Origin: Podarcis liolepis
Lineage: Eukaryota
Direction: 5' to 3' (one strand)
Length of the DNA stretch: 64,000 bases
NCBI GenBank assembly: GCA_965112155.1
Contig: OZ218098.1
Below are positions 1,406 through 36,100 of the stretch, one piece after another. The notes under the pieces are model-generated. The model had not been told where the DNA came from. It ran no database searches and saw only the letters and a list, made by a program, of their open reading frames with translations. Position 1 is the stretch's first letter. Every line of letters starts with the position of its first letter. Both the position numbers and the translations under genes were made by a program.

Positions 1406-1617
1406 NNNNNNNNNNNNNNNNNNNNNNNNNNNNNNNNNNNNNNNNNNNNNNNNNNNNNNNNNNNNNNNNNNNNNNNNNNNNNNNNNNNNNNNNNNNNNNN
1501 NNNNNNNNNNNNNNNNNNNNNNNNNNNNNNNNNNNNNNNNNNNNNNNNNNNNNNNNNNNNNNNNNNNNNNNNNNNNNNNNNNNNNNNNNNNNNNNNNNNN
1601 NNNNNNNNNNNNNNNNN
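1406..1617. other. Assembly gap (212 N) in the last SIGIRR intron
   Basis: Run of N. ORFs crossing it are artefacts. Confidence 1.
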
Positions 1618-2642: not shown

Positions 2643-3314
2643 CTGCTTGAGAGAAAGTGATGTACATTAAATGTATTTCATGAGGCTTACAAAGGTGTTA
2701 CCGGTTTCTCTTCCCAGCTCCCCTCCTGAGGTCATTGAAATGCTGCCTGTTAGTGCTAAGGGAAAGAGCAGCTTCTCTCAGACCCTGGGGATTGGCGAAA
2801 GGCGGGACTGAAGCCTCCTCCAGATTCCCTAGGTGTTGAAATATTCAGGCCCCTTACTCTTGTCTGACATGTCAAGGCATGCTCTAAAATAAAACATTTA
2901 AATTAAGTTTAAAACTGCCAACTGACTCCCAAGCTGCATGAGATGCAGGAGGTCTATAATTAGATCTCCTGACATTTCTGCTTTTAGTTAAAAGTAGCCA
3001 GAGGCTCCAGCTTTGATTAGAGCAGTGACCCTGAGCCTCAGGCCTGAGGAAAAAAATTTTGAACTCTATTTCCCTGTGCCATTACCCCAATCTGTACTGT
3101 CTCCTAGTTATAGATCTCCTGCATCTCACACAACTTGATACTTAAATTGGTTTAATAGTTCTTCCTTCTCTCCGGCTAGCCTTAGCAACTAGTTCTTTGA
3201 GGAAGGATAGCAATCTCACTGAAGTACTATTCGCAGAAATGTTGGTGGGAAGCAATGATACTTAAACGGGTGTTTAAATGAGCTTGAACTGTATATATGT
3301 CCTCCTTGTAAATA

Positions 3315-3540
3315 CAGTGGTACTTCGGGTTAAGTACTTAATTCCTTTCGGAGGTCCGTTCTTAACCTGAAACTGTTCTTAACCTGAAGCACCACTTTAG
3401 CTAATGGGGTCTCCTGCTGCTGCTGCGCCTCCGGAGCACGATTTCTGTTCTCAGCCTGAAGCAAAGTTCTTAACCCGAGGTAATATTTCTGGGTTAACGG
3501 AGTCTGTAACCTGAAGTGTCTGTAACCCGAGGTACCACTG
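3315..3540 (+). mobile_element. Tc1/mariner (pogo/Tigger-like) MITE, copy 1
   Basis: TIRs CAGTGGTAC(T/C)TCGGGTTA...TAACCCGAGGTACCACTG with TA on both sides. 226 bp; three more copies in the window. Strand is relative to the other copies. Confidence 0.9.
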
Positions 3541-3654
3541 TACTTGCAGAAAGTGTAGTGGCACCAGTCATTTTAAAGCACTGCAACTTGTCTCATTCTG
3601 TCTTGCCATCCCTTCCTCTCTGCTAACTGCTACCTTCTCCTTCCCATCCTACAG

Positions 3655-16700: not shown

Positions 16701-19700
16701 AGTAATTTCCAAAACAGAATTACTCTTGACTAGAACATGAGCTGGGATCTAGAAGTCTGCTGCTTCTCTGCCACCACCTGACAAGAACAGATCTGGTGGA
16801 TGTAAGGAACAAAAGCATTGCCCAGCTTGGTACAGAAGAATGAAACTACAACCTCGGCTTAAGAAGATGGCCCCTCAATGATTTAGGGAGAAATCATTCC
16901 ATATCACAATTGTTTACATGTACAAGAATAACCACAGAGAACTTGGCCTTGGAATAAAGATCTCTTGGCCTTGTGTAGATAATGGTTCAGCCACAACTGC
17001 AGCACATTACAAGGCAACCAGCTAACAAGGGGAGGACTCACCTTGTCCTCTGACTTCCCTACTTCTAGTGAGCTATTAATGTAATTGACCATGGAGTCTA
17101 CCAGCCCATGGCATTCACGCATTTTCTGACGAGTTTGCTGGCTGGCAGAGCTAAGATTCCTAGAAGGGAAACACAAAAGCATGTCATCGCAAGGAATAAT
17201 ATTCCTGTCACCTGAGACCTGCCACCACATCTTAAAAGGTCAAATTAATTAATATACTAAATACAGAAAGCAGGAGATTCTGCCAGGTACATATCAGAGG
17301 GAAGCAGCATCTCTCGGGTAAATTATTCTGCTTGACCTGGCAGCTGCATATATATAAGGCAGAGAAAGAACATGATCTTGACAATGGAACCCCAAAAGTA
17401 GACTGCAGACCTAACCCTACTTACCTGAGAGCAAGGCCTGTTGAATTCAATAGAAATTGTCTCTGAGTAAAGATAGTTAGGACTGCACTTTGAGTCTCAC
17501 TGTCAGGGGCAGCCAAATGAGATCCATGCAAAGAGAAATGGGCAGGGCTGCACTGTCAGTCAAACTGGCCCATTTTACAGTCCACGACAGAGCCCCATAA
17601 GCTATTCATAGACACCGCTAATAAGTGTGACGTTCTTGGCTTTAAAAATCAAAAGTGCCGTTTCATTGTGTGCATTGTTTAACAGTTAAACATTGCTTAA
17701 CTGAAGTGCATTGTTTAACAGTCCCCTCCCAACCCCTTGCTTCTGTCCTGGATGGTGCACCAATTGATTGTTCATGCCATCTTAGTCAGCAGCAATGTAC
17801 TAAGAGAAGGGCAGAGTGCGAATGGCAACATTGGTGCCAGCTTACACTATGGACCACTTTGGCCTGCCATGGAAGCTTTTACAGTGTAAAAGCAGCACTG
17901 CCTCTGTTTCTTTAATATTGCTTCACCAAGGATATTGAAATATTGCCACATCATGCATAGCTTTCCCAAGTTGGTCTTATAAGGATCCAATAGCCATGGA
18001 ATATGTCTTTCCTTTAGTAAGGAGAAATACCTGAGGAAGCCAGTTGCATTGTAGAAGATTTCTGCCTCTGAGGCATTTTGCTGGATAAGAGCAGCATTGC
18101 CTGTCCCAGACAGGGGAATCAAGACCAGGTCTGTGAGCTTCTCCAGGGTGTCACGGGCCAGGCGGTCCTTGAGGTTATCGCTGGAAGACAGATTCCAGAG
18201 GATTCCTGCAGAGCAATGAGACAAGCATGTGTAAGGAAACTTCACTACAGAAACCACTGCTCCACAAGATGGGGAAACTCACAGCTTCCTGAGGAACTAA
18301 GCAGGAAGTAGTGTGTTTTTTTCATGCCTAGGTGGCTCCCATGTCCTATTAAATCATCATCACTGTGCAAAATGCTTCACAGTCTTTACACCCTTGTCGT
18401 CAGGATAAACCTGCACGTTAGGCCACTCATACTTTAGATTCACAGATAAGCAACTGAGGCCCAGTTTACAGGAACATTTCCTGACATGTGCCAGCAAAAC
18501 AGCAGGTTGCGGAGATCAGTCCTATGAAGGCCCTGACATCCCTTGACTTGGCCTGCTATTTCCTAGGACAACCCAGACCTAAAAGGTGTTTCAAAGCATT
18601 CCCACAAATACAGTGGTACCTTGGCTTAAGTACTTAATTCATTCCGGAGGTCTGTTCTTAACCTGAAACTGTTCTTAATCTGAAGCACCACTTTAGCTAA
18701 TGGGGCCTCCTGCTGCCGCCGTGCCACCGGAGCACAATTTCTGTTCTCATCCTGAAGCAAAGTTCTTAACCTGAAGCACTATTTCTGGGTTAGTGGAGTC
18801 TGTAACCTGAAGCGTATGTAACCTGAAGCATATGTAACCCAAGGTACCACTGTACTTGTCATGTGGAAACATGGCAATCTGCCACAGTGGCTTCCCCTTG
18901 TCACCAGCCTGGCACAGGGCAACTTTCTCAAGGTCACCCAGCACACCTATTCTCTGAACAGGGCTGTGAAACAAGGTACCTCAAGCCCCAGGCAGACCCT
19001 TATTTTCTTCAGTTCTTCATAAAGGGAAGAACTTTAGCTTAGGGGCAGAGCATCTGCTTTGCATGCAGAAAGGTCCCAGGGTTCAATTCCCAGCATCTCC
19101 AGGTAGAGCTGGAAATCTCCCCCATATGAAACCCTTGGGAGCTGCTGCCAGTCAGTGAAGACAACACTGAGCTATACAGACCAGTGTTCTGACTTGATAT
19201 AAGGCAGCTTGCTATATGTTCCTTTCCTATGAATAGCACATGGCTTGCTATCTGCTGAATGGTTTTACTGGAACTCATCATACTTCATTTGATTTGGGGT
19301 TCTATGTACAGTGGTACCTCAGGTTACATACACTTCAGGTTACATACGCTTCAGGTTACATACTCCACTAACCCAGAAATAGTACTTTGCTTCAGGATGC
19401 GAACAAAAATCATGCTTCGGCGGCGCGGCAGCAGCAGGAGGCCCCATTAGCTAAAGTGGTACCTCAGGTTAACAACAATTTCAGGTTAAGAACGGACCTC
19501 CGGAACGAATTAAGTACTTAACCCGAGGTACCACTGTATTGGGTGTTTCCTTGAAGTTGGTCATGACATCTCCAGACAGCTATCCCTTTAAACATTAAGA
19601 GTAGCTAGGAAGCAGCCTCCCACACTATGCTATTTAAAGTACAGTTGAAGTGAATTGGAAAATCAATGTAAAAAAGCAAATATCAATCAACCATGTTCAA

Positions 19701-22159: not shown

Positions 22160-24456
22160 AGCTACAGGCAGGCAAGAATGCAGTTGTCTTGTCTCCTCCC
22201 CACCCCCAATCCATATATACCAGCAGCAAAAGGCTAATCTCATGCACAGAACGAGGTATGCCCTGGGCTGTGATATCTGGGGATTACTCTTTCCATCCTC
22301 TGATTGTATTCAGCTAAAGCCACTTTCACAGACTCCACCATGCTTGTAATAAGCGTTAAAGCTCATTGCATCATAGCTCCTAGACCTAACTTTCCCATTA
22401 GCCTGGTATTAGATTAGACAATCAGAGCCTGTTGGGCAGGATTAGGAAGGCCCTTTTGTAAGAGAAGCAAATGTAATCTCTCCTGTTGGCTGGACCTCTA
22501 TATTCAGTGCCCTTGCTCTCTCCCAGCGCAAAAGACAGTTGCAGACAGGCTGGAGTCAGGTCCCAACCCACACCCTGGCCCTCCCTACCACCTATATTTA
22601 TCACCTTCCTTTGCACACCATGACATACAGAGCAACTAGAGTGCGTAATCTGAGGATTTGGAACTCCCTCCCCCAGCCCACGAAGCGCTGTGGATTCTGG
22701 CAGGTTTTATGTTTTCCTCTATGAGGATTTGCTGGTGCTTATCCCAGTTCTCTTTGGGAATGGGCACGGGTGCCAATCTGAGCTCACAGAGTGTTTCAAT
22801 AAACTGGGAATTGCTAGTGTCCTGCTGATTTCTTCTGTTCACAGATTAGTGTGCCTTCAAGCTTTCTGTGAATTGAGAAATGAGACACCTGGAAAATTTG
22901 AGCTGAGTTGCAGGGGGTGGGGGTGGGGGGAGGAGAGTGGCTAGTTCTGAAGGGGACCTGGGACAAAAGGGAGGGGAGCAGCATAGAGAAAAAAGCTCTG
23001 GATGTGAATGTATCGAGTGCAGTGCAAAAGATGATGCAGGTGCAGGCAAGGTGATTCATGGGCCAAATGCAATTAAGGTGCATGGAAAAAGACCAAAGTT
23101 GTTCTTCATATACAAATTCAAATACATGCAGGTGTGGGCTAATCTAGTTTATTTGAAGGTGGGGTGGGGTGTGGATTTATTAACAGCAAAATACTGCTCA
23201 AAAGTAGGCAAGCCCTTACTTTGCATGCAGAAGGTCCCAGGTTCAATTCCTGGCACCTCCAGGAGAGCTGGAAAATTTGTATTGTATTGTATTGTCTCAG
23301 GGCAGTTCACAGTATTTCCATGTTCTTGCAGTTTTTGGCCCTGGTTCATAGTCAGTTGCATGTGTTAGTAATGCCGACCTTTTTGGACACAGGAGTTAAG
23401 AGCCCGGTTCTATAGTCCACTTGCTTGGGGATGCCACCAAAAATAGTTTCCCCAAGACATGTTGTCTCCCTCCTGCTGGAATATCTGACCACTACCACAA
23501 GGATCAGGGCCATCATGTTTCTGCTCTCCTAACAGTGGTAGCCAAACCCATGGAGTACAGGCAGACAGAATCCAAGCTGCAGCAAGCACTCCTAGGAGTG
23601 ACAGTAGGGCAGGGGCTACTCATGGGGAGACTATTTGGGGCAGCAGCTCTGTGGCAAATATAATGCGCAGCTCTAAGCACTAGAGAGCTTGCCTCATCAT
23701 AACTTGCCCGATGCAAACTTCTCTCACCTGTGACATTCTTGCGCAACTCATCATCTTGCTCGCATAAAGTGCGCATCAGCTCATAGATCCCGTTTTCTTC
23801 CACCAGGGCCAGCTTGTTTTCAGCATTGTCATAGATGAGGTTGCGCATGGCTCCAGTGGCATGGCGCTGCACCTCATGGTTGGAGTTGTTGAAGAGCTTC
23901 ACTAGTTTGGGCACGGCTTGGAGGCTGCGAGCCTGTTGAGGCAGAGAGACAGGGGCAGAAAGAGTAGTACACTTGTCAGAGAGAAACAAGAAAGCAGGTG
24001 GAACTTTTCAGTATGCCATGCCACCTAAGGTTGCCTGCTCTGTTCTCATTCCAGATAACTTACTCATCCCCACAGGCAAGAGCCCAATGCATCAGAATGA
24101 GTGCTGTTGCAGGCTTTTCAATGAGATGTATCAGTGACTAAACCTGTAGTCCACATTGGTCCCCCTGGGAAACAAGCTCAGGCCCTTGGCATGGCACGTT
24201 CCCAGTATCACCTTGGGATATGCCTCTGCTGCCTCACCTGTTTCTTGGCATCATTGTCGCTATAGCATTTGTGCTGGATGTAGGCAGCTCCAAGCACCTG
24301 TAGGTTGGGGTCACTGGCCATCAGGTATTTCACCGCAGAAGGGAGATCAATGTCATCAAACCTGAAAACCAAGGCCTAGTTAGAGGGGATAGTGTGCATT
24401 TTCCCATCTTCACCTCATTCACATAGAGCTCTAATAAATGTCCTCTGAATACTGTG

Positions 24457-24515
<59 letters not shown>

Positions 24516-24931
24516 TTTCGTAGATTTTCACGGGTACAGGAATGCAGGTTTTGGTGTCTTCGGGTGTCTTCCCGTGTAAGAGTTGGGGTGTCTAGGCGAC
24601 GTTTCGACGAGGTCTCACTCGTCATCTTCAGGCTGGTGCTTTCGGCTTCTTGTTACTGGAACAGAGCAGGATCTCAGTGTTTGAGTTCCTATAAATACTG
24701 TTGAGGGGGTGTGGTGTATAGCCTCCAACGTTCTGGGCAGAGAGGAAGTTCCCAGGTTAGTGTGCCTTTTCTTCTTTTGTTCCTTAATTACTTGAGGGAT
24801 ATCTTGAGTGATTTCTTGAGTGATATTCTGAGTACCACTTAGGTGGGTCATTAAGTGTGGATTAGTTGCTAAAGCTTTCGTGTCTTGACCTCTTGAGCTT
24901 GTGAAGAGTTTTTCTGAGAAGATGGCTGTAC

Positions 24932-24977
<46 letters not shown>

Positions 24978-27900
24978 CAAATGTATATTAAGCAAATCTT
25001 AATATCTTTATTTTATCATGTTTGCAGATTGGAGGTATACAAAGGGTTTTTCTTTTCTTTTCTTTTTTGCAAAACCAAAAGTATTTTGTAAAAAAGAGGG
25101 CGGGATAGAGGGGTTTGGAATTGAGAATTAGATGGCAAAGGAGAAGACTGCAAACAGGCATGAAGGACAGGAGGGCCCAGCGCAGCAGAAAAGCACACTG
25201 AGTAACAACTGCAACCTTTGGTCAGGCTTACTCTGTTTTCTGAACCCTTACTATTTGGTTCTCGCAGTTCTGTGCCTTTCTTCCTAACTGCAATGGCTAG
25301 AAGCATGCTTTGTTATTCAAAATTATGAGACTGGAGAGTCTCAGAATGAAAGATACCAGAATGGATTCCAGGTTCTGTGCTTCCACAATGGATATGCTGA
25401 AAACAGAAAGCTAAGTATAGTATTCCACCCCACACCCACCAAGGGAATTACAGAATGGGTTTCTGGGTTTTTCACCCCTGTTGTTATTCTGTCTCTCACA
25501 GCTACAAAAAACCTACCATTAAAATTATGGACTGGTCAGAGGGCAAACAGGCAAACTTAGCAGGGGATCAAATACTCCCCCCCCTCACTGTAAGTCAACA
25601 CCCTACTAGCCATAAAGTGGATTGACAAGAGGCTGTCACATCGCCTTGGCCAGGGGTAGGCAACCTAAGGACGGATGCGTCTCAATTGCCTTCTCAATCT
25701 GGCCCGCGGACAGTCCAGAAATCAGCGTGTTTTTACATGAGTAGAATGTGTCCTTTTATTTAAAACGCATCTTTGGGTTATTTGTGGGACCTGCCTGGTG
25801 TTTTTACATGAGTAGAATGTGTCCTTTTATTTAAAATGCATCTTTGGGTTATTTGTGGGACCTGCCTGGTGTTTTTACATGAGTAGAATGTGTGCTTTTA
25901 TTTAAAACGCATCTTTGGGTTATTTGTGGGACCTGCCTGGTGTTTTTACATGAGTAGAATGTGTCCTTTTATTTAAAACGCATCTTTGGGTTATTTGTGG
26001 GGCCTGCCTGGTGTTTTTACATGAGTAGAATGTGTGCTTTTATTTAAAACGCATCTTTGGGTTATTTGTGGGACCTGCCTGGTGTTTTTACATGAGTAGA
26101 ATGTGTGCTTTTATTTAAAATGCATCTCTGGGTTATTTGTGGGGCATAGGAATTTGTTCATTTTCCCCCCCAAAATATAGTCTGGCCCACCACATGGTCT
26201 GAGGGACGGTGGACCGGCCCACAACTGAAAAAGGTTGCTGACCCCTGGCCTTGGCTTTGGCTTCAGGATGTTACATTCAAAGCACCCTAACATGAAGTTT
26301 CGGAATTATGGGGGAAAGAAGAGTAGAAGTCCTATCATCTTCTTTGAAGCACCATAAGTTGTACTTTGCTGCTAGAGTAAAGGCATACTTCCAGAGAGGG
26401 ACAACATTCATATGACTCACTGAGCAGCATTAAACAAGTGATGATCAAGTACTTCAATAAAAAAAAATATCACCAAGGGAGGAAGAACACTATGCTCTGT
26501 GTCCCTGATTGTTCCTCTTTTTTTAGACCACCTCCGCTGGGAACAGAGTGCCCCATACCCTGCAAGTAAACCGCAGGACACTCACCCTCCAGAGAAGGAC
26601 TGCTGAGACATCAGTGTGTTGTGACCGTCGTACATGTCAATGGCACGCAGGTCTTGCAAATGGTGGTTGGAGTCAGCCAAGCTGCGCACAGAGGGGGCAC
26701 GGGAACTGCGTTCCATCATTCCTGCATAGGAGTTCCCGGCCTGAGAAGCCTGGACTGTGCCATAGGTGCCAGTGCTAAGGCGGGAGCGGTTGTTGCTCTG
26801 GAAGCGCTGCAAGGTGCGCATGGCCGGCGCGCGGATGACAGGCCTGTTCTGCGGTGCCTCCACACCATCCATCCAGTCGATGGGCCCCTTCATGCCTGCG
26901 TTGGAGCCGGCGCTCATCTGCCTTTCAAAGGTGTAGGATCTGCTGAAGCCGCCACCTGCCCGGTTTTTGTAGAGCGCTGCCTGGGCCAGTGGATCCAGCT
27001 GCTCAGACACAATGCTGTAGTGGTCATCCACACCCCCAGGACTGCCTGGCCCATCCGCCAGGCGCAGGGAGCGCAGGGACATGGTGTCATAGTTCTGATG
27101 CCCCCGGTAGTTCCGCTCGTGAAAAGACCTGGGGCGGGGGGCAGTGCCGGCAGACTGAGACAGCGTGTAATTTGGGCTATAAGCCAGGCCCTTTGGCCCA
27201 ACGCCATTGCTGATGGAGGCCATTCTCTTGTTGGGTCTGAGGTCCACCGCTGAGCGAGAGGACCAGCTAGTAGTTTTCATGGTGCTGTAACCTTTCTTTC
27301 CAGCTGGTGGTTGGTACAGCTACAATGGGAGGAAAGAAGGGAGTGCAATGTTTATTTTCAAAAGGAGATAGACTCTTCTATCAAATGAAATAATGCAGAG
27401 TATTTGGTTTGTCCTGCAAATGCCACACCCCAGCTGCAAGGTCAAGTGGGGTCTTTCCATACCACCCATTTATTTGCCCTTGATGGGCACCCTGCTCAGT
27501 GAACTGGCAGGCCACATTCTGCTCTCAGTTAACAGCCATGCTGCTCTGCACAGAATCTTAAAAGCTGGCAGAGCTGGCTCTGACACCGTCACTGGGATAT
27601 TTTACTGAAACAATCGCTGCAAGATTGCATAGTACCATGGGGACTAGTTTTACAAAAGCAGGGAGGGCAAAAGTGGGAATTAGATTCCTTTAACACTGGT
27701 GGTAATCATCACGACAGTCATCATCACCCACAATCGCAGTTCATTAGCAATCAATAGGCAGCAGAAAGAGCTGGGTTTTTGAACTTACAGAGCTTTTGGG
27801 GGCTGTGCCATTTGTCTGGGATCTGGAGCTGTAGTGCTGCTGCAGAGTGCTGCATTGGCCATTGGTGGAGTTTCCGCCTGCAGGACAAGAATACATTGAG

Positions 27901-33187: not shown

Positions 33188-36100
33188 ATGTTTAGTGTAT
33201 ATGAGATAATAATATGGACAATTTCCTCAATCAAGGAACAGCTGCTAGAATGGGACTCCTAAAACCAGTGGGAGAAACAAAAGGGGTGTCTAGAATTCAG
33301 GTCCATTAAAATGGTGTGAATAATGTTTTAAGGCCTGGTGTCAAATCATATAGCATACAAAACACCACAAAGAATCACCATTTATTTACACTACAAAGGG
33401 GAAATGGAGGTGGAAAGGATAAAGAAACACTGCATAATTAAGGAAACTACCACGCCTATCTTGTGTAATGCACCAATGTTTAAAGGTCTAGATTTTGTAA
33501 AAGCTTAATGAAGCTGCAGTGAGAGAAAAATACAGTGGTACCTCAGGTTAAGTACTTAATTCGTAACGGAGGTCTGTACTTAACCTGAAACTGTTCTTAA
33601 CCTGAAGCACCACTTTAGCTAATGGGGCCTGCTGCTGCTGCCACGCCACCGGAGCACGATTTCTGTTCTCATCCTGAGGCAAAGTTTTTAATCCGAGGTA
33701 ATATTTCTGGGTTAGCGGAGTCTGTAACCTGAAGTGTATGTAACCTGAAGTGTATGTAACCTGAGGTACCACTGTATGCACCTGCAACACTAGAGGACCT
33801 TCTCCTGAAAGAGACAGGAACCAAAGTATTTTCCAAATAGGATACTTTAGTATCTAGCAAATACCTTTGACAAACTAGACTGCTACACTGACTAGATTTA
33901 TCACACCCTTTGGGAGATTTTGTTTTCAGCGCTTACCATTTGGAATTGCAAGTGCTTCCTAGATTTTTTAAACAAAGATGACAGAAGTCCTGAGAGAGAT
34001 AAAAGGAGTAATTGTCTTCCTGAATGACATTCTAATACAGAGTACATCAGTGGAAGAAAGACCATGACAAAACACTGGTCACTGTCAGGAATAAGATCCA
34101 TTAATCTGGACTCAATATAAACAAGGAGAAATGCATTTTTCATCAAGGTGAAGTTGAATTACTTGGACAACTAATCACACAACATGGGACAAAGCCATGC
34201 CTAGAGATGGTAAATGCCATCAAAGAACTGAAAGCACTGAAGGCTACAGAACTGAGACAATTTCTGGGAATGCTGAACTATCTTTCTATGATGATATTTG
34301 TACAATACTTCAAAAGATAAACAACCACTACACCGATTATTGAAATCCACTACTTCCTGGTTTTGTGGATCAATTCTGTGGGCTATCTTTAAAAATATAA
34401 ATGAGATGTTCGCCAATCTTAGTTTTAGGATGCCACAAGCCTACAATGGGTAGCACTGATGCAAGAAACTGCAGATTTAGAAGGCGTGCTATTACAATTG
34501 CATGGTTCAGAATGGATGCCAGTCACATTCTGCTCTAGAACTCTAACCAGAGCAGAAAAAAATATTATGAAAAAATTGAGAATTTTTTTTGCTAGTGATT
34601 GGTCATGCAAAAACTTTTACAGATACCTATGTGATCTGTCTTATTTCAGATTCGCAGACCATAATCCCTTTGTGACCTTGATTAAAGAAAAAAACATGTA
34701 GCAGAATATATTACAAGAAAACAATTGATCATAGCAGACACCTTGTCACAAAGTCCCACAAGAGCCTGATTATATTCTGCTGAGAGTGAACATGGAATAC
34801 TTAACAAAAACTGATGATATCTTCTTCCTATCACTGAGAAGGTGCAATCACCAAAAGCAAACTCTCGGGCTTGCATAGTAGAACTAACAGCAATGTTACT
34901 GTCACGACTAATACTTACTCTGAGTTATTTGGAAGCTGTCAAGGTAAATGACCGAAGACCTGAACTATCAAGTAGTTTAACAGCACTGATGTACTGGTTG
35001 TTTATTTAAATAAGGAAGGGATGTTGTGTGGATAGTGTCATTCTCTGGTTTGGTCAGTAGGTGGCATTGTACTTAGTTAAATCTAAATGGCTTCAAGAGT
35101 TTCCTTTGTTGGTTCTTTCTTGTTGGAGACAATGATGTTCTTATCTAGCTGCCTGACTGGGATTCCCTCTAAGCCTTCCATGACATGTGATAACAAATCT
35201 ATTTAGAGTAATGCTTATACAAATCAAAACTAATTATTATGTGCAAAGACGAAACCAAACCAAAGGAGTTGCTATGGGAGTGAAAAAAGGGTTGTGCAAA
35301 CTAACCTTGCATGTCTCCATGTTATACTAATTAATTCATTACTTAGAAACGTATGAGGTCAGCACTTAAAGAATGTGTGAACCTTCCTAAGTGTTGCACC
35401 ACAATAAAGACACCCTCAGTTTTTCCTCCTCTGAAAGAAATTGTCCTCTTACCGTAAAATGTAAGTAAAGTGGGGGAATCTCTCTTCATACCAGAAGATT
35501 AGGAAACTAGGTCTGTTTCTGCAGAGGCTTTCAACTTATTAAGCTAAACAAGATAAGCTTTATAGAGGAAATGCAGCGGTCAGAGTGAAAATTCCTCCCA
35601 TTTTACTGAACAGCTGCATGTGTAGTTATCAAACATGACCCTAAGTTAAAAGAATAATCATTTAGGAGCTGTTTGCCAAATAAATCCAATGACAGATGAG
35701 GCTGATTTCCCAGCAGTGGAGGAGACACAAACCAGGCTCAAAGCCGCAAATAAAATCTGAGCATTTCTCATTAATGCAGGCACACCTCATTTATTGTGCT
35801 TTGCTTTATTGTGCTTCACAGATATTGCTCCTTACAAGGATGCAGGTGCAGCTGCAGGCAGCCCAGCCACATCCAAGGGAAGGAAGCGCCCTGCTACCAC
35901 CCTGCTTCTGGCTACAGGAGTGGAGCTGGCTAGTGCTGGACTTGGGCTTTCCCCCTCCTGCCCCTGATGACGGGGGGGGGGGGCTGGCTTAGTAGCCTAC
36001 AGCATAGAGAAAACATAACTTTTATATGCACTAGGAAACAAAAACAAAAAATGTGTGACTTGCTTTAATGCAATATTTGCTTTATTGTGCTGGCCTAGAA

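What the first reader, a model, noticed from the sequence alone, without database searches (positions are those of the whole stretch)
24459..24974. Intronic hammerhead ribozyme motif in a (TA)n-embedded Penelope-like insert, sense to the PKP3 pre-mRNA
Seen: the minus strand reads CUGAAGA-U-[GACGAG/UGAGAC/CUCGUC]-GAAAC-GUC^G (24631 to 24597). All hammerhead core residues are present, stem II is a perfect 6 bp, there is one extra U after A9, and the stem III region is a loopless palindrome (ACGU). The motif lies about 240 nt upstream of the exon 4 acceptor and is transcribed with PKP3. The 420-bp insert is bracketed by two long (TA)n tracts, and an open frame ends (PEDDE*) inside stem II. Established: Penelope-like retroelements carry minimal type-I hammerheads that cleave poorly as monomers and better as dimers, and some amniote introns hold domesticated hammerheads. 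Inference: this could be a self-cleaving RNA in a desmosomal gene's intron that affects exon 3-4 splicing. Caveat: stem I has only 2-3 bp here (CCAGC vs GCCUAG, possibly CpG decay of CCGGC), so it may be inactive.
Basis: partly seen in the sequence, partly recalled or inferred. Interest (0 to 1): 0.8.

Follow-up and report, generated by a model that had tools for sequence, protein, structure and literature searches.

The report
Truncated Penelope retroelement with its hammerhead
The hammerhead motif is real, but it is the standard small ribozyme at the end of a very abundant lizard jumping gene (Penelope/Poseidon type) that landed in a TA repeat inside a plakophilin-3-like intron, and nothing suggests it cuts or regulates the host RNA.

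Summary
It has the core CUGAAGA, a bulged U, a 6-bp helix II, GAAA, a loopless ACGU helix III and C17. Chance expectation is 0.01 per window.

It is the ordinary minimal hammerhead of a Penelope-like element of the Poseidon type. The "extra U" makes the element's own start codon (A9-U-G10.1), as published for Anolis Poseidon (PMC11167929). The ORF from that AUG is 68% identical to the N-terminus of a Poseidon-like protein. The copy ends 112 nt into the ORF, at the published reverse-transcription start site, and carries the typical 28-30-nt "tail". Both flanks are (TA)n, a known target of these elements.

Reads show a very high-copy, young family. About half the pieces in the best run are at least 99% alike, so the weak helix I and the bulged U are family features, not decay.

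RNA reads of the family show no ends at the cleavage site. The monomer cannot form helix III, and there is no second copy in the window. A role in PKP3 splicing is unsupported.

This scan already holds 110 hammerhead/Penelope notes on other DNA of this genome. The finding is ordinary and of low interest.

The parts
24935..24974 (.). (AT)20 microsatellite on the 5' side of the element (element read on the minus strand); one half of the split (TA)n target
   Evidence: TRF, 100% matches; junction TATATAT|GCAGTACAGC
24514..24934 (-). 5'-truncated copy (421 nt) of a Poseidon-type Penelope-like element. It holds the end of the ORF (tentative), the pLTR/UTR, the hammerhead, the first 37 codons and the tail.
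   Evidence: Very high-copy family: 4124 and 34145 contig pieces laid in two DNA runs, 2020 of 4124 at least 99% alike in X1. N-terminal ORF match. Architecture as in Poseidon_Ac.
24869..24934 (-). Tentative last 21 codons plus TAG of the element's ORF (AVQPSSQKNSSQAQEVKTRKL*)
   Evidence: Frame 0 of the insert. Weak by-eye likeness to the C-terminus and stop context of Poseidon_Ac. Not computed by a tool.
24596..24633 (-). Minimal type-I hammerhead. Helix I: GC 24633-24632 with GC 24597-24596. Core CUGAAGA: 24631-24625. Bulged U: 24624. Helix II: 24623-24618 with 24611-24606. Loop II: 24617-24612. G12 A13 A14: 24605-24603. Palindromic helix III ACGU: 24602-24599. C17: 24598. Predicted cleavage between 24598 and 24597.
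   Evidence: The features match the published PLE min-HHR description.
24515..24625 (-). First 37 codons of the element's ORF. The AUG 24625-24623 is A9, the bulged U and G10.1 of the ribozyme.
   Evidence: 68% identity, residues 1-37 to 1-37, to P0001; E 6.2e-4 against 1.84 billion proteins; BLASTP 25/37. Same layout as Poseidon_Ac.
24514..24543 (-). The 28-30-nt 'tail' beyond the more common 3' end of family copies
   Evidence: In three runs many copies stop at 24542 and continue as (TA)n (table 7). The tail of 30-40 bp between two RT start sites is described in PMC11167929 and PMC8557442.
24459..24513 (.). (TA)27.5 microsatellite on the 3' side of the element; the other half of the target
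   Evidence: TRF; junction CGAAAGC|ATATATA
26586..27319 (-). Head-domain exon of the plakophilin-3-like host gene (upper limit is the open stretch, not a mapped acceptor); donor GT at 26585-26584
24238..24361 (-). Next exon of the host gene (G|FDDIDLPSAVKYL...KKQ). Acceptor AG at 24363-24362, donor GT at 24237-24236.

Best explanation
What it is. A young, 5'-truncated copy of a Poseidon-type Penelope-like retroelement (PLE). It inserted by target-primed reverse transcription into a (TA)n microsatellite in the 2.2-kb intron between the head-domain exon and the first armadillo exon of a plakophilin-3-like gene, in sense orientation.

The hammerhead. It is the element's own minimal type-I ribozyme and lies at the junction of pLTR and ORF. 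Its bulged U, together with A9 and G10.1, forms the element's start codon.

The 3' end. It lies 112 nt into the ORF because PLE reverse transcription starts inside the template RNA, at one of two adjacent sites. This copy used the distal site and so carries the 28-30-nt tail.

Expected activity. As a lone monomer in the intron the motif cannot form helix III, and its helix I has only 2 bp. It is most likely inert for the host transcript and is a neutral passenger.

Shown here: the motif, the flanks, the copy number, the N-terminal ORF match, the alternative 3' ends, and the absence of read ends at the cleavage site.
Inferred: the insertion mechanism, taken from the Anolis in-vitro work, and neutrality.
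For: - Motif and chance.
- Published PLE min-HHR features (PMC4209133) are a long helix II of 6-8 bp, a short helix I (2 bp in D. virilis), an unpaired base at the 5' end of helix II, and a minimal palindromic helix III. All four are present here.
- Poseidon_Ac consensus, read across its tandem junction, gives CUGAGGA-U-G..., a 6-bp helix II, then GAAACGUC. [quoted passage not shown] Here it is 25 nt.
- ORF from this AUG: 68% identical over residues 1-37 to the N-terminus of P0001.
- The continuation of P0001 aligns without gaps with Poseidon_Ac_1p residues 34-94 at 30 of 61 identities. This was counted by eye, not by a tool.
- 3' end at +112 against the published RT starts at +111-118. The alternative family end at about +82-84 is followed by (TA)n in three runs. 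This gives a 28-30-nt tail against the published 30-40 bp.
- (TA)n is a listed preferred target of PLEs.
- High copy number and youth: 4124 and 34145 pieces, mostly at least 95% alike; 12 CpG kept in 421 nt.
- No cleavage signal: table 6 lists no such place, and depth is 81.7 / 85.8 / 81.1 across the site. The same negative result is published for Anolis.
Against: - Homology to a reverse transcriptase / GIY-YIG ORF therefore rests on 37 residues plus a by-eye alignment of P0001 with the published Poseidon_Ac protein.
- P0001 has no Pfam family and no Atlas neighbour.
- The E-value of the single library hit is modest (6.2e-4).
- Reads cannot separate this locus from its thousands of paralogues, so nothing was measured on the PKP3 intron itself.
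- Standard RNA-seq is a weak detector of 5'-OH and cyclic-phosphate ends.
Confidence: 0.86

Rival explanations
1. It is a monomer of a non-autonomous, pLTR-derived element (a non-LTR retrozyme or a SINE-like derivative of a PLE), not a truncated autonomous PLE.
For: The short 3' part has a huge copy number. Li et al. 2026 show that vertebrate non-LTR retrozymes derive from PLE pLTRs and often occur as dispersed monomers, about 43% of them intronic in Xenopus.
Against: The copy keeps 37 stop-free codons that match a PLE N-terminus. It ends at the PLE RT start site. Depth falls gradually towards the 5' end, as variable 5' truncation would give (table 2). There is no tandem arrangement in the window. 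One search lists no back-joint of the kind a circular RNA would give: table 5 has only one 70-nt skip and table 5c two small backward joints in DNA contigs of X1, none in the RNA runs.
Confidence: 0.09
2. It is a working or domesticated intronic ribozyme that cleaves the PKP3-like pre-mRNA and modulates joining of the flanking exons.
For: The orientation is sense and the catalytic core is intact, 236 nt upstream of the acceptor. The Anolis Poseidon hammerhead cleaves when the element's protein is added. Family transcripts are expressed in a related species.
Against: It is a single copy. The loopless helix III needs a dimer. Helix I is 2 bp. The hammerhead fold is 3 kcal/mol above the monomer minimum, and the dimer form 9 kcal/mol above the dimer minimum. 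There is no end pile-up or depth dip at the site in family RNA. The copy is nearly identical to thousands of paralogues, so it is recent rather than conserved. No Rfam hammerhead model matches, including HH9 and HH10. About a third of sense reads carry A-to-G changes at A14 and A15.1.
Confidence: 0.03
3. It is a chance match to the hammerhead consensus in unrelated sequence.
For: No Rfam model reports it.
Against: Expected 0.01 per window. The perfect 6-bp helix II, the family context and the start-codon layout are all shared with a published active element.
Confidence: 0.005

Closest known systems
Poseidon_Ac (PAc), the Penelope/Poseidon-clade element of Anolis carolinensis (Frangieh et al. 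2024, Mob DNA 15:12, PMC11167929)
   Same: - Hammerhead at the pLTR-ORF junction, with core CUGA(A/G)GA, a bulged U, a 6-bp helix II and GAAACGUC.
- Start codon made of A9, U and G10.1.
- Cut site 25 nt (here) against 26 nt after the AUG.
- Copy end at +112, within the mapped RT start window +111-118.
- An optional tail of about 30 nt, preceded by an AC-rich stretch.
- No read ends at the cleavage site in RNA-seq.
   Different: - A different family: the N-terminal peptide before the conserved E-x-L-R block is not alignable with PAc.
- Loop II has 6 nt, not 7.
- Helix II is all Watson-Crick here, against two G-U pairs in PAc.
- Helix I has 2 bp against 3 bp.
- This copy lies in (TA)n, whereas PAc was reported to cut at ATT.
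- It is only a 421-nt fragment.
Minimal hammerheads of metazoan PLEs (Cervera & De la Pena 2014, PMC4209133)
   Same: Long helix II, short helix I, an unpaired base 5' of helix II, and a minimal palindromic helix III that implies action as a dimer. Expected activity is low or absent as a monomer.
   Different: Nothing of substance. This is one more genomic instance.
Conserved intronic hammerheads of amniotes (Rfam HH9 and HH10)
   Same: A type-I hammerhead core in an intron, sense to the host gene.
   Different: No match to those models. It has no stable helix III or helix I, belongs to a young high-copy repeat, and shows no sign of conservation at the locus.
Non-LTR retrozymes (Cervera & De la Pena 2020, PMC7229834; Li et al. 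2026 preprint)
   Same: A PLE-type hammerhead on a short dispersed unit of a few hundred nt, with family transcripts present.
   Different: It is not tandem, RNA reads show no circular joints, and it retains PLE coding sequence at its 3' end.

Membership tests
Hammerhead ribozyme (catalytic core) | Conserved core C3 U4 G5 A6 N7 G8 A9 ... G12 A13 A14, an A15.1-U16.1 pair, and H17 (not G) at the cleavage site | tested here: met
   CUGAAGA at 24631-24625, GAA at 24605-24603, A15.1 at 24602, U16.1 at 24599, C17 at 24598. One extra U after A9, a published tolerated variant.
Hammerhead ribozyme (catalytic core) | Three helices around the core that can form in the molecule | tested here: not met
   Helix II is a perfect 6 bp. 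Helix I is 2 bp. Helix III (ACGU with no loop) cannot close in a monomer. The hammerhead-like fold scores -8.5 against a minimum of -11.6 kcal/mol. It could only be met as a dimer.
Hammerhead ribozyme (catalytic core) | Self-cleavage at H17 | tested here: inconclusive
   Bench cleavage cannot be tested with these tools. Family RNA reads show no ends at 24598/24597 and flat depth, but the library type is a weak detector and the reads are not locus-specific.
Rfam hammerhead families (Hammerhead_1, _3, _II, HH9, HH10) | Covariance-model score at or near the gathering score | tested here: not met
   No hit at gathering score on the window. None at E<=10 on 651 bases or on 81 bases.
PLE minimal hammerhead (Cervera & De la Pena 2014) | Helix II of 6-8 bp, short helix I, an unpaired base at the 5' end of helix II, a minimal palindromic helix III, and a location in a PLE terminal repeat | tested here: met
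   All five are read against the description.
Penelope-like element, Penelope/Poseidon clade | [quoted passage not shown] | tested here: inconclusive
   The fragment holds only 37 N-terminal codons and perhaps 21 C-terminal ones. P0001 (189 aa) aligns by eye with the Poseidon_Ac N-terminal domain at 30/61.
Penelope-like element, Penelope/Poseidon clade | ORF starts inside the hammerhead; copies end at internal RT start sites, with an optional 30-40-bp tail | tested here: met
   AUG at 24625-24623. This copy ends at +112. Other copies end at about +82-84 and are followed by (TA)n.
Penelope-like element, Penelope/Poseidon clade | Insertion bias for microsatellites, with (TA)n listed as a preferred target | tested here: met
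   (TA)n lies on both sides here and at the ends of other copies in three runs. Literature.
Non-LTR retrozyme | Tandem units each with a hammerhead, and circular RNA products | tested here: not met
   One unit and one hammerhead in the window. No backward joints in the RNA runs (tables 5 and 5c).

The most novel reading that the evidence does not exclude
In cells where the PLE family's protein is made, or through pairing with abundant family transcripts, the sense-strand hammerhead could cut the PKP3-like pre-mRNA 236 nt before the acceptor. The published Anolis protein switches on cleavage of the Anolis hammerhead. This would tie output of a desmosomal gene to retroelement activity.
Probability: 0.03. 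Interest if true: 0.5.

Novelty: new member of a known kind. Interest (0 to 1): 0.1.

Why it matters
It matters little as a discovery. Minimal hammerheads of Penelope-like elements are known to be massively dispersed in metazoan genomes, and this genome alone has 110 earlier notes of them in this scan.

The case is useful as a calibration. The features that looked like defects, namely the extra U, the weak helix I and the loopless helix III, are the published hallmarks of the family. The extra U is the element's start codon.

This copy also independently reproduces, in another lizard lineage, the two 3' ends and the tail that were mapped in vitro for the Anolis element. The match is at the homologous codon.

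Tried and rejected
- Rfam scans at three scopes gave no hammerhead hit. Only (TA)n artefacts appeared, such as mir-297-like matches.
- Protein Atlas on the PKP3-like head exon and on P0001 gave nothing usable.
- Pfam on P0001, on the PEDDE* frame and on the host exons found only an Arm repeat in one host exon.
- The search of earlier findings by place and by sequence returned nothing.
- A tool alignment of this copy or of P0001 with the published Poseidon_Ac consensus was left out. It was compared by eye and is marked so.
- The spliced PKP3 model was not joined. Exons were searched one by one by reference.
- Covariation in helix II could not be tested. The family is too uniform, with no listed variant at 10% or more in the motif.
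- Orthologous presence or absence in related species could not be judged. All contig pieces are short repeat pieces and none reaches unique flanks.

Full report
**Observation**

The minus strand between 24633 and 24596 reads GC CUGAAGA U GACGAG UGAGAC CUCGUC GAA ACGU C | GC.
- A descriptor (CTGANGA, 12-38 free bases, GAAACGTC) hits once in the 64-kb window, against 0.01 expected from shuffles.
- The exact string has no second copy within 3 mismatches.
- A looser descriptor adds two hits at chance level, neither with a helix II.
- The tracts (TA)27.5 at 24459-24513 and (AT)20 at 24935-24974 bracket a 421-bp insert.

Helix I is 2 bp: G1.1-C2.1 and C1.2-G2.2.

**Host gene**

Stop-free stretches on the minus strand give a plakophilin-type gene.
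- One exon has an Arm repeat (Pfam) and matches plakophilin-2, plakophilin-1 and delta-catenin structures.
- The head-domain exon's best relatives are squamate proteins at 78-82% identity.
- Its only named relative is 'plakophilin-3-like', at 46% identity.
- The upstream exon ends at 26586 (donor GTGAGT). The next exon starts at 24361 after an AG, and the frame joins as GG|G.

The insert therefore lies in a 2.2-kb intron, sense to the gene, with the predicted cleavage site 236 nt before the exon. The exon number was not checked. The exons were searched one by one and were not joined.

**What the insert is**

Reads and contigs were laid from four public runs of two species labels closely related to the source.
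- 4124 and 34145 contig pieces were laid from the two DNA runs. In the best run 2020 of 4124 are at least 99% alike.
- The listed variants at 10% or more in DNA all lie outside the motif.
- In three runs many copies stop at 24542 and continue as (TA)n.

The insert is thus a member of a very abundant, young family. The family habitually abuts (TA)n and has two alternative 3' ends, 28-30 nt apart.

For the Anolis Poseidon element it reports:
- The cut site lies 26 nt after the start codon.
- Reverse transcription starts internally at two adjacent sites, 111-118 nt into the ORF.
- The optional 30-40-bp 'tail' of genomic copies is the stretch between those sites.
- The hammerhead does not cleave without the element's protein.
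- No RNA-seq reads begin or end at the cleavage site.

The consensus in its supplement, read across the tandem junction, gives CUGAGGA-U-GCCUGC...GUGGGC-GAAACGUC.

The copy here has the same layout.
- A9, the 'extra' U and G10.1 form an AUG at 24625-24623.
- The cut site is 25 nt after that AUG.
- The copy ends 112 nt into that frame.

The 37 codons from this AUG were searched against 1.84 billion proteins. They gave one hit, P0001, with residues 1-37 matching 1-37 at 68% identity, E 6.2e-4; BLASTP gives 25/37. Read by eye against the published Poseidon_Ac protein, the continuation of P0001 aligns without gaps at 30 of 61 positions (ExLRxxIxxLYGExxFQxTRxxEKL...CRDxxxIP...KTP). This count is mine, not a tool result, because the published sequence has no reference here. 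In that alignment the last codon of this copy falls on codon 38 of the Anolis ORF, inside the mapped reverse-transcription start window.

**The 'defects' are family features**

Cervera and De la Pena 2014 describe PLE minimal hammerheads as having:
- a long helix II of 6-8 bp,
- a short helix I (2 bp in Drosophila virilis),
- an unpaired base at the 5' end of helix II,
- a minimal palindromic helix III that implies dimers,
- no detectable activity as single motifs and low activity as dimers.

All of these apply here. Craig et al. 2021 list (TA)n as a preferred PLE target, note that target duplications cannot be seen in microsatellites, and mention the 30-40-bp tail.

**Function for the host**

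A lone monomer cannot close a loopless ACGU helix.
- The hammerhead-like fold (helices I and II) scores -8.5 kcal/mol against a minimum of -11.6.
- The dimer with an intermolecular helix III scores -20.3 against -29.4.
- The local fold is not unusual: z = -1.2.
- There is no partner motif in the window.

In stranded RNA reads of the family the depth across the site is flat (81.7, 85.8, 81.1). No place qualifies as a pile of ends, and the RNA runs show no backward joints. These reads come from all copies, so they say nothing direct about this intron. They do agree with the published negative result.

Intronic location is not unusual. About 43% of related Xenopus elements are intronic. The branch-point region is untouched, because the (TA)n tract ends 98 nt before the exon.

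I conclude that this is a neutral passenger (confidence 0.86).

**The PEDDE* frame**

It has no family match. It runs through what is UTR in the Poseidon layout. A different frame (AVQPSS...KL*, stop at 24871-24869) resembles the Poseidon_Ac C-terminus and stop context by eye, but weakly.

**Novelty**

This is an ordinary instance of a known kind. This scan already holds 110 notes with hammerhead and Penelope on other DNA of this genome, including a followed-up one on the start codon inside the ribozyme.

Noticed in passing
window 24559-24841, family-wide (runs X23 and X16): In stranded RNA reads, T>C appears almost only in first-mate-on-plus reads and A>G almost only in first-mate-on-minus reads (e.g. 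24569 23/81 against 2/32; 24594 1/80 against 18/37). This holds at dozens of places, while DNA contigs of the same species label barely show these changes. Counts by kind of change are A>G 31 and T>C 17 against C>T 3 and G>A 3. This looks like ADAR-type hyper-editing of family transcripts from both strands. On the sense RNA it hits A14 and A15.1 of the hammerhead core (24603, 24602) in about 35% of reads, which would disable the ribozyme. DNA and RNA are not from one individual.
   Followed up: partly
window 24460-24515 and 24933-24988: The two flanking (TA)n tracts are mutually complementary (56-nt arms, 89%). In the pre-mRNA they could pair and loop out the 421-nt insert (I8).
   Followed up: no
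window 25656-26214: A 71-bp tandem repeat of about 8 units, the core copies 98% alike, lies in the same intron upstream of the insert.
   Followed up: no
window 19028-19099 (+), with repeats at 3310-3558, 18606-18854, 33528-33776 and inverted at 19381-19540: A tRNA-like match just above Rfam's gathering score (33.1 bits) lies between copies of a dispersed repeat of about 250 bp present four times in the window (nearest copies 18606-18854 and inverted 19381-19540). It is probably a tRNA-derived SINE, not a tRNA gene.
   Followed up: no
window 34429-34698 (+): A stop-free stretch matches the RNase H-like domain of reverse transcriptases (PF17917, E 2.9e-8). It is a decayed LTR-type retroelement remnant on the strand opposite to the host gene.
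   Followed up: partly
window 1406-1617: A run of 212 N (gap or masked).
   Followed up: no
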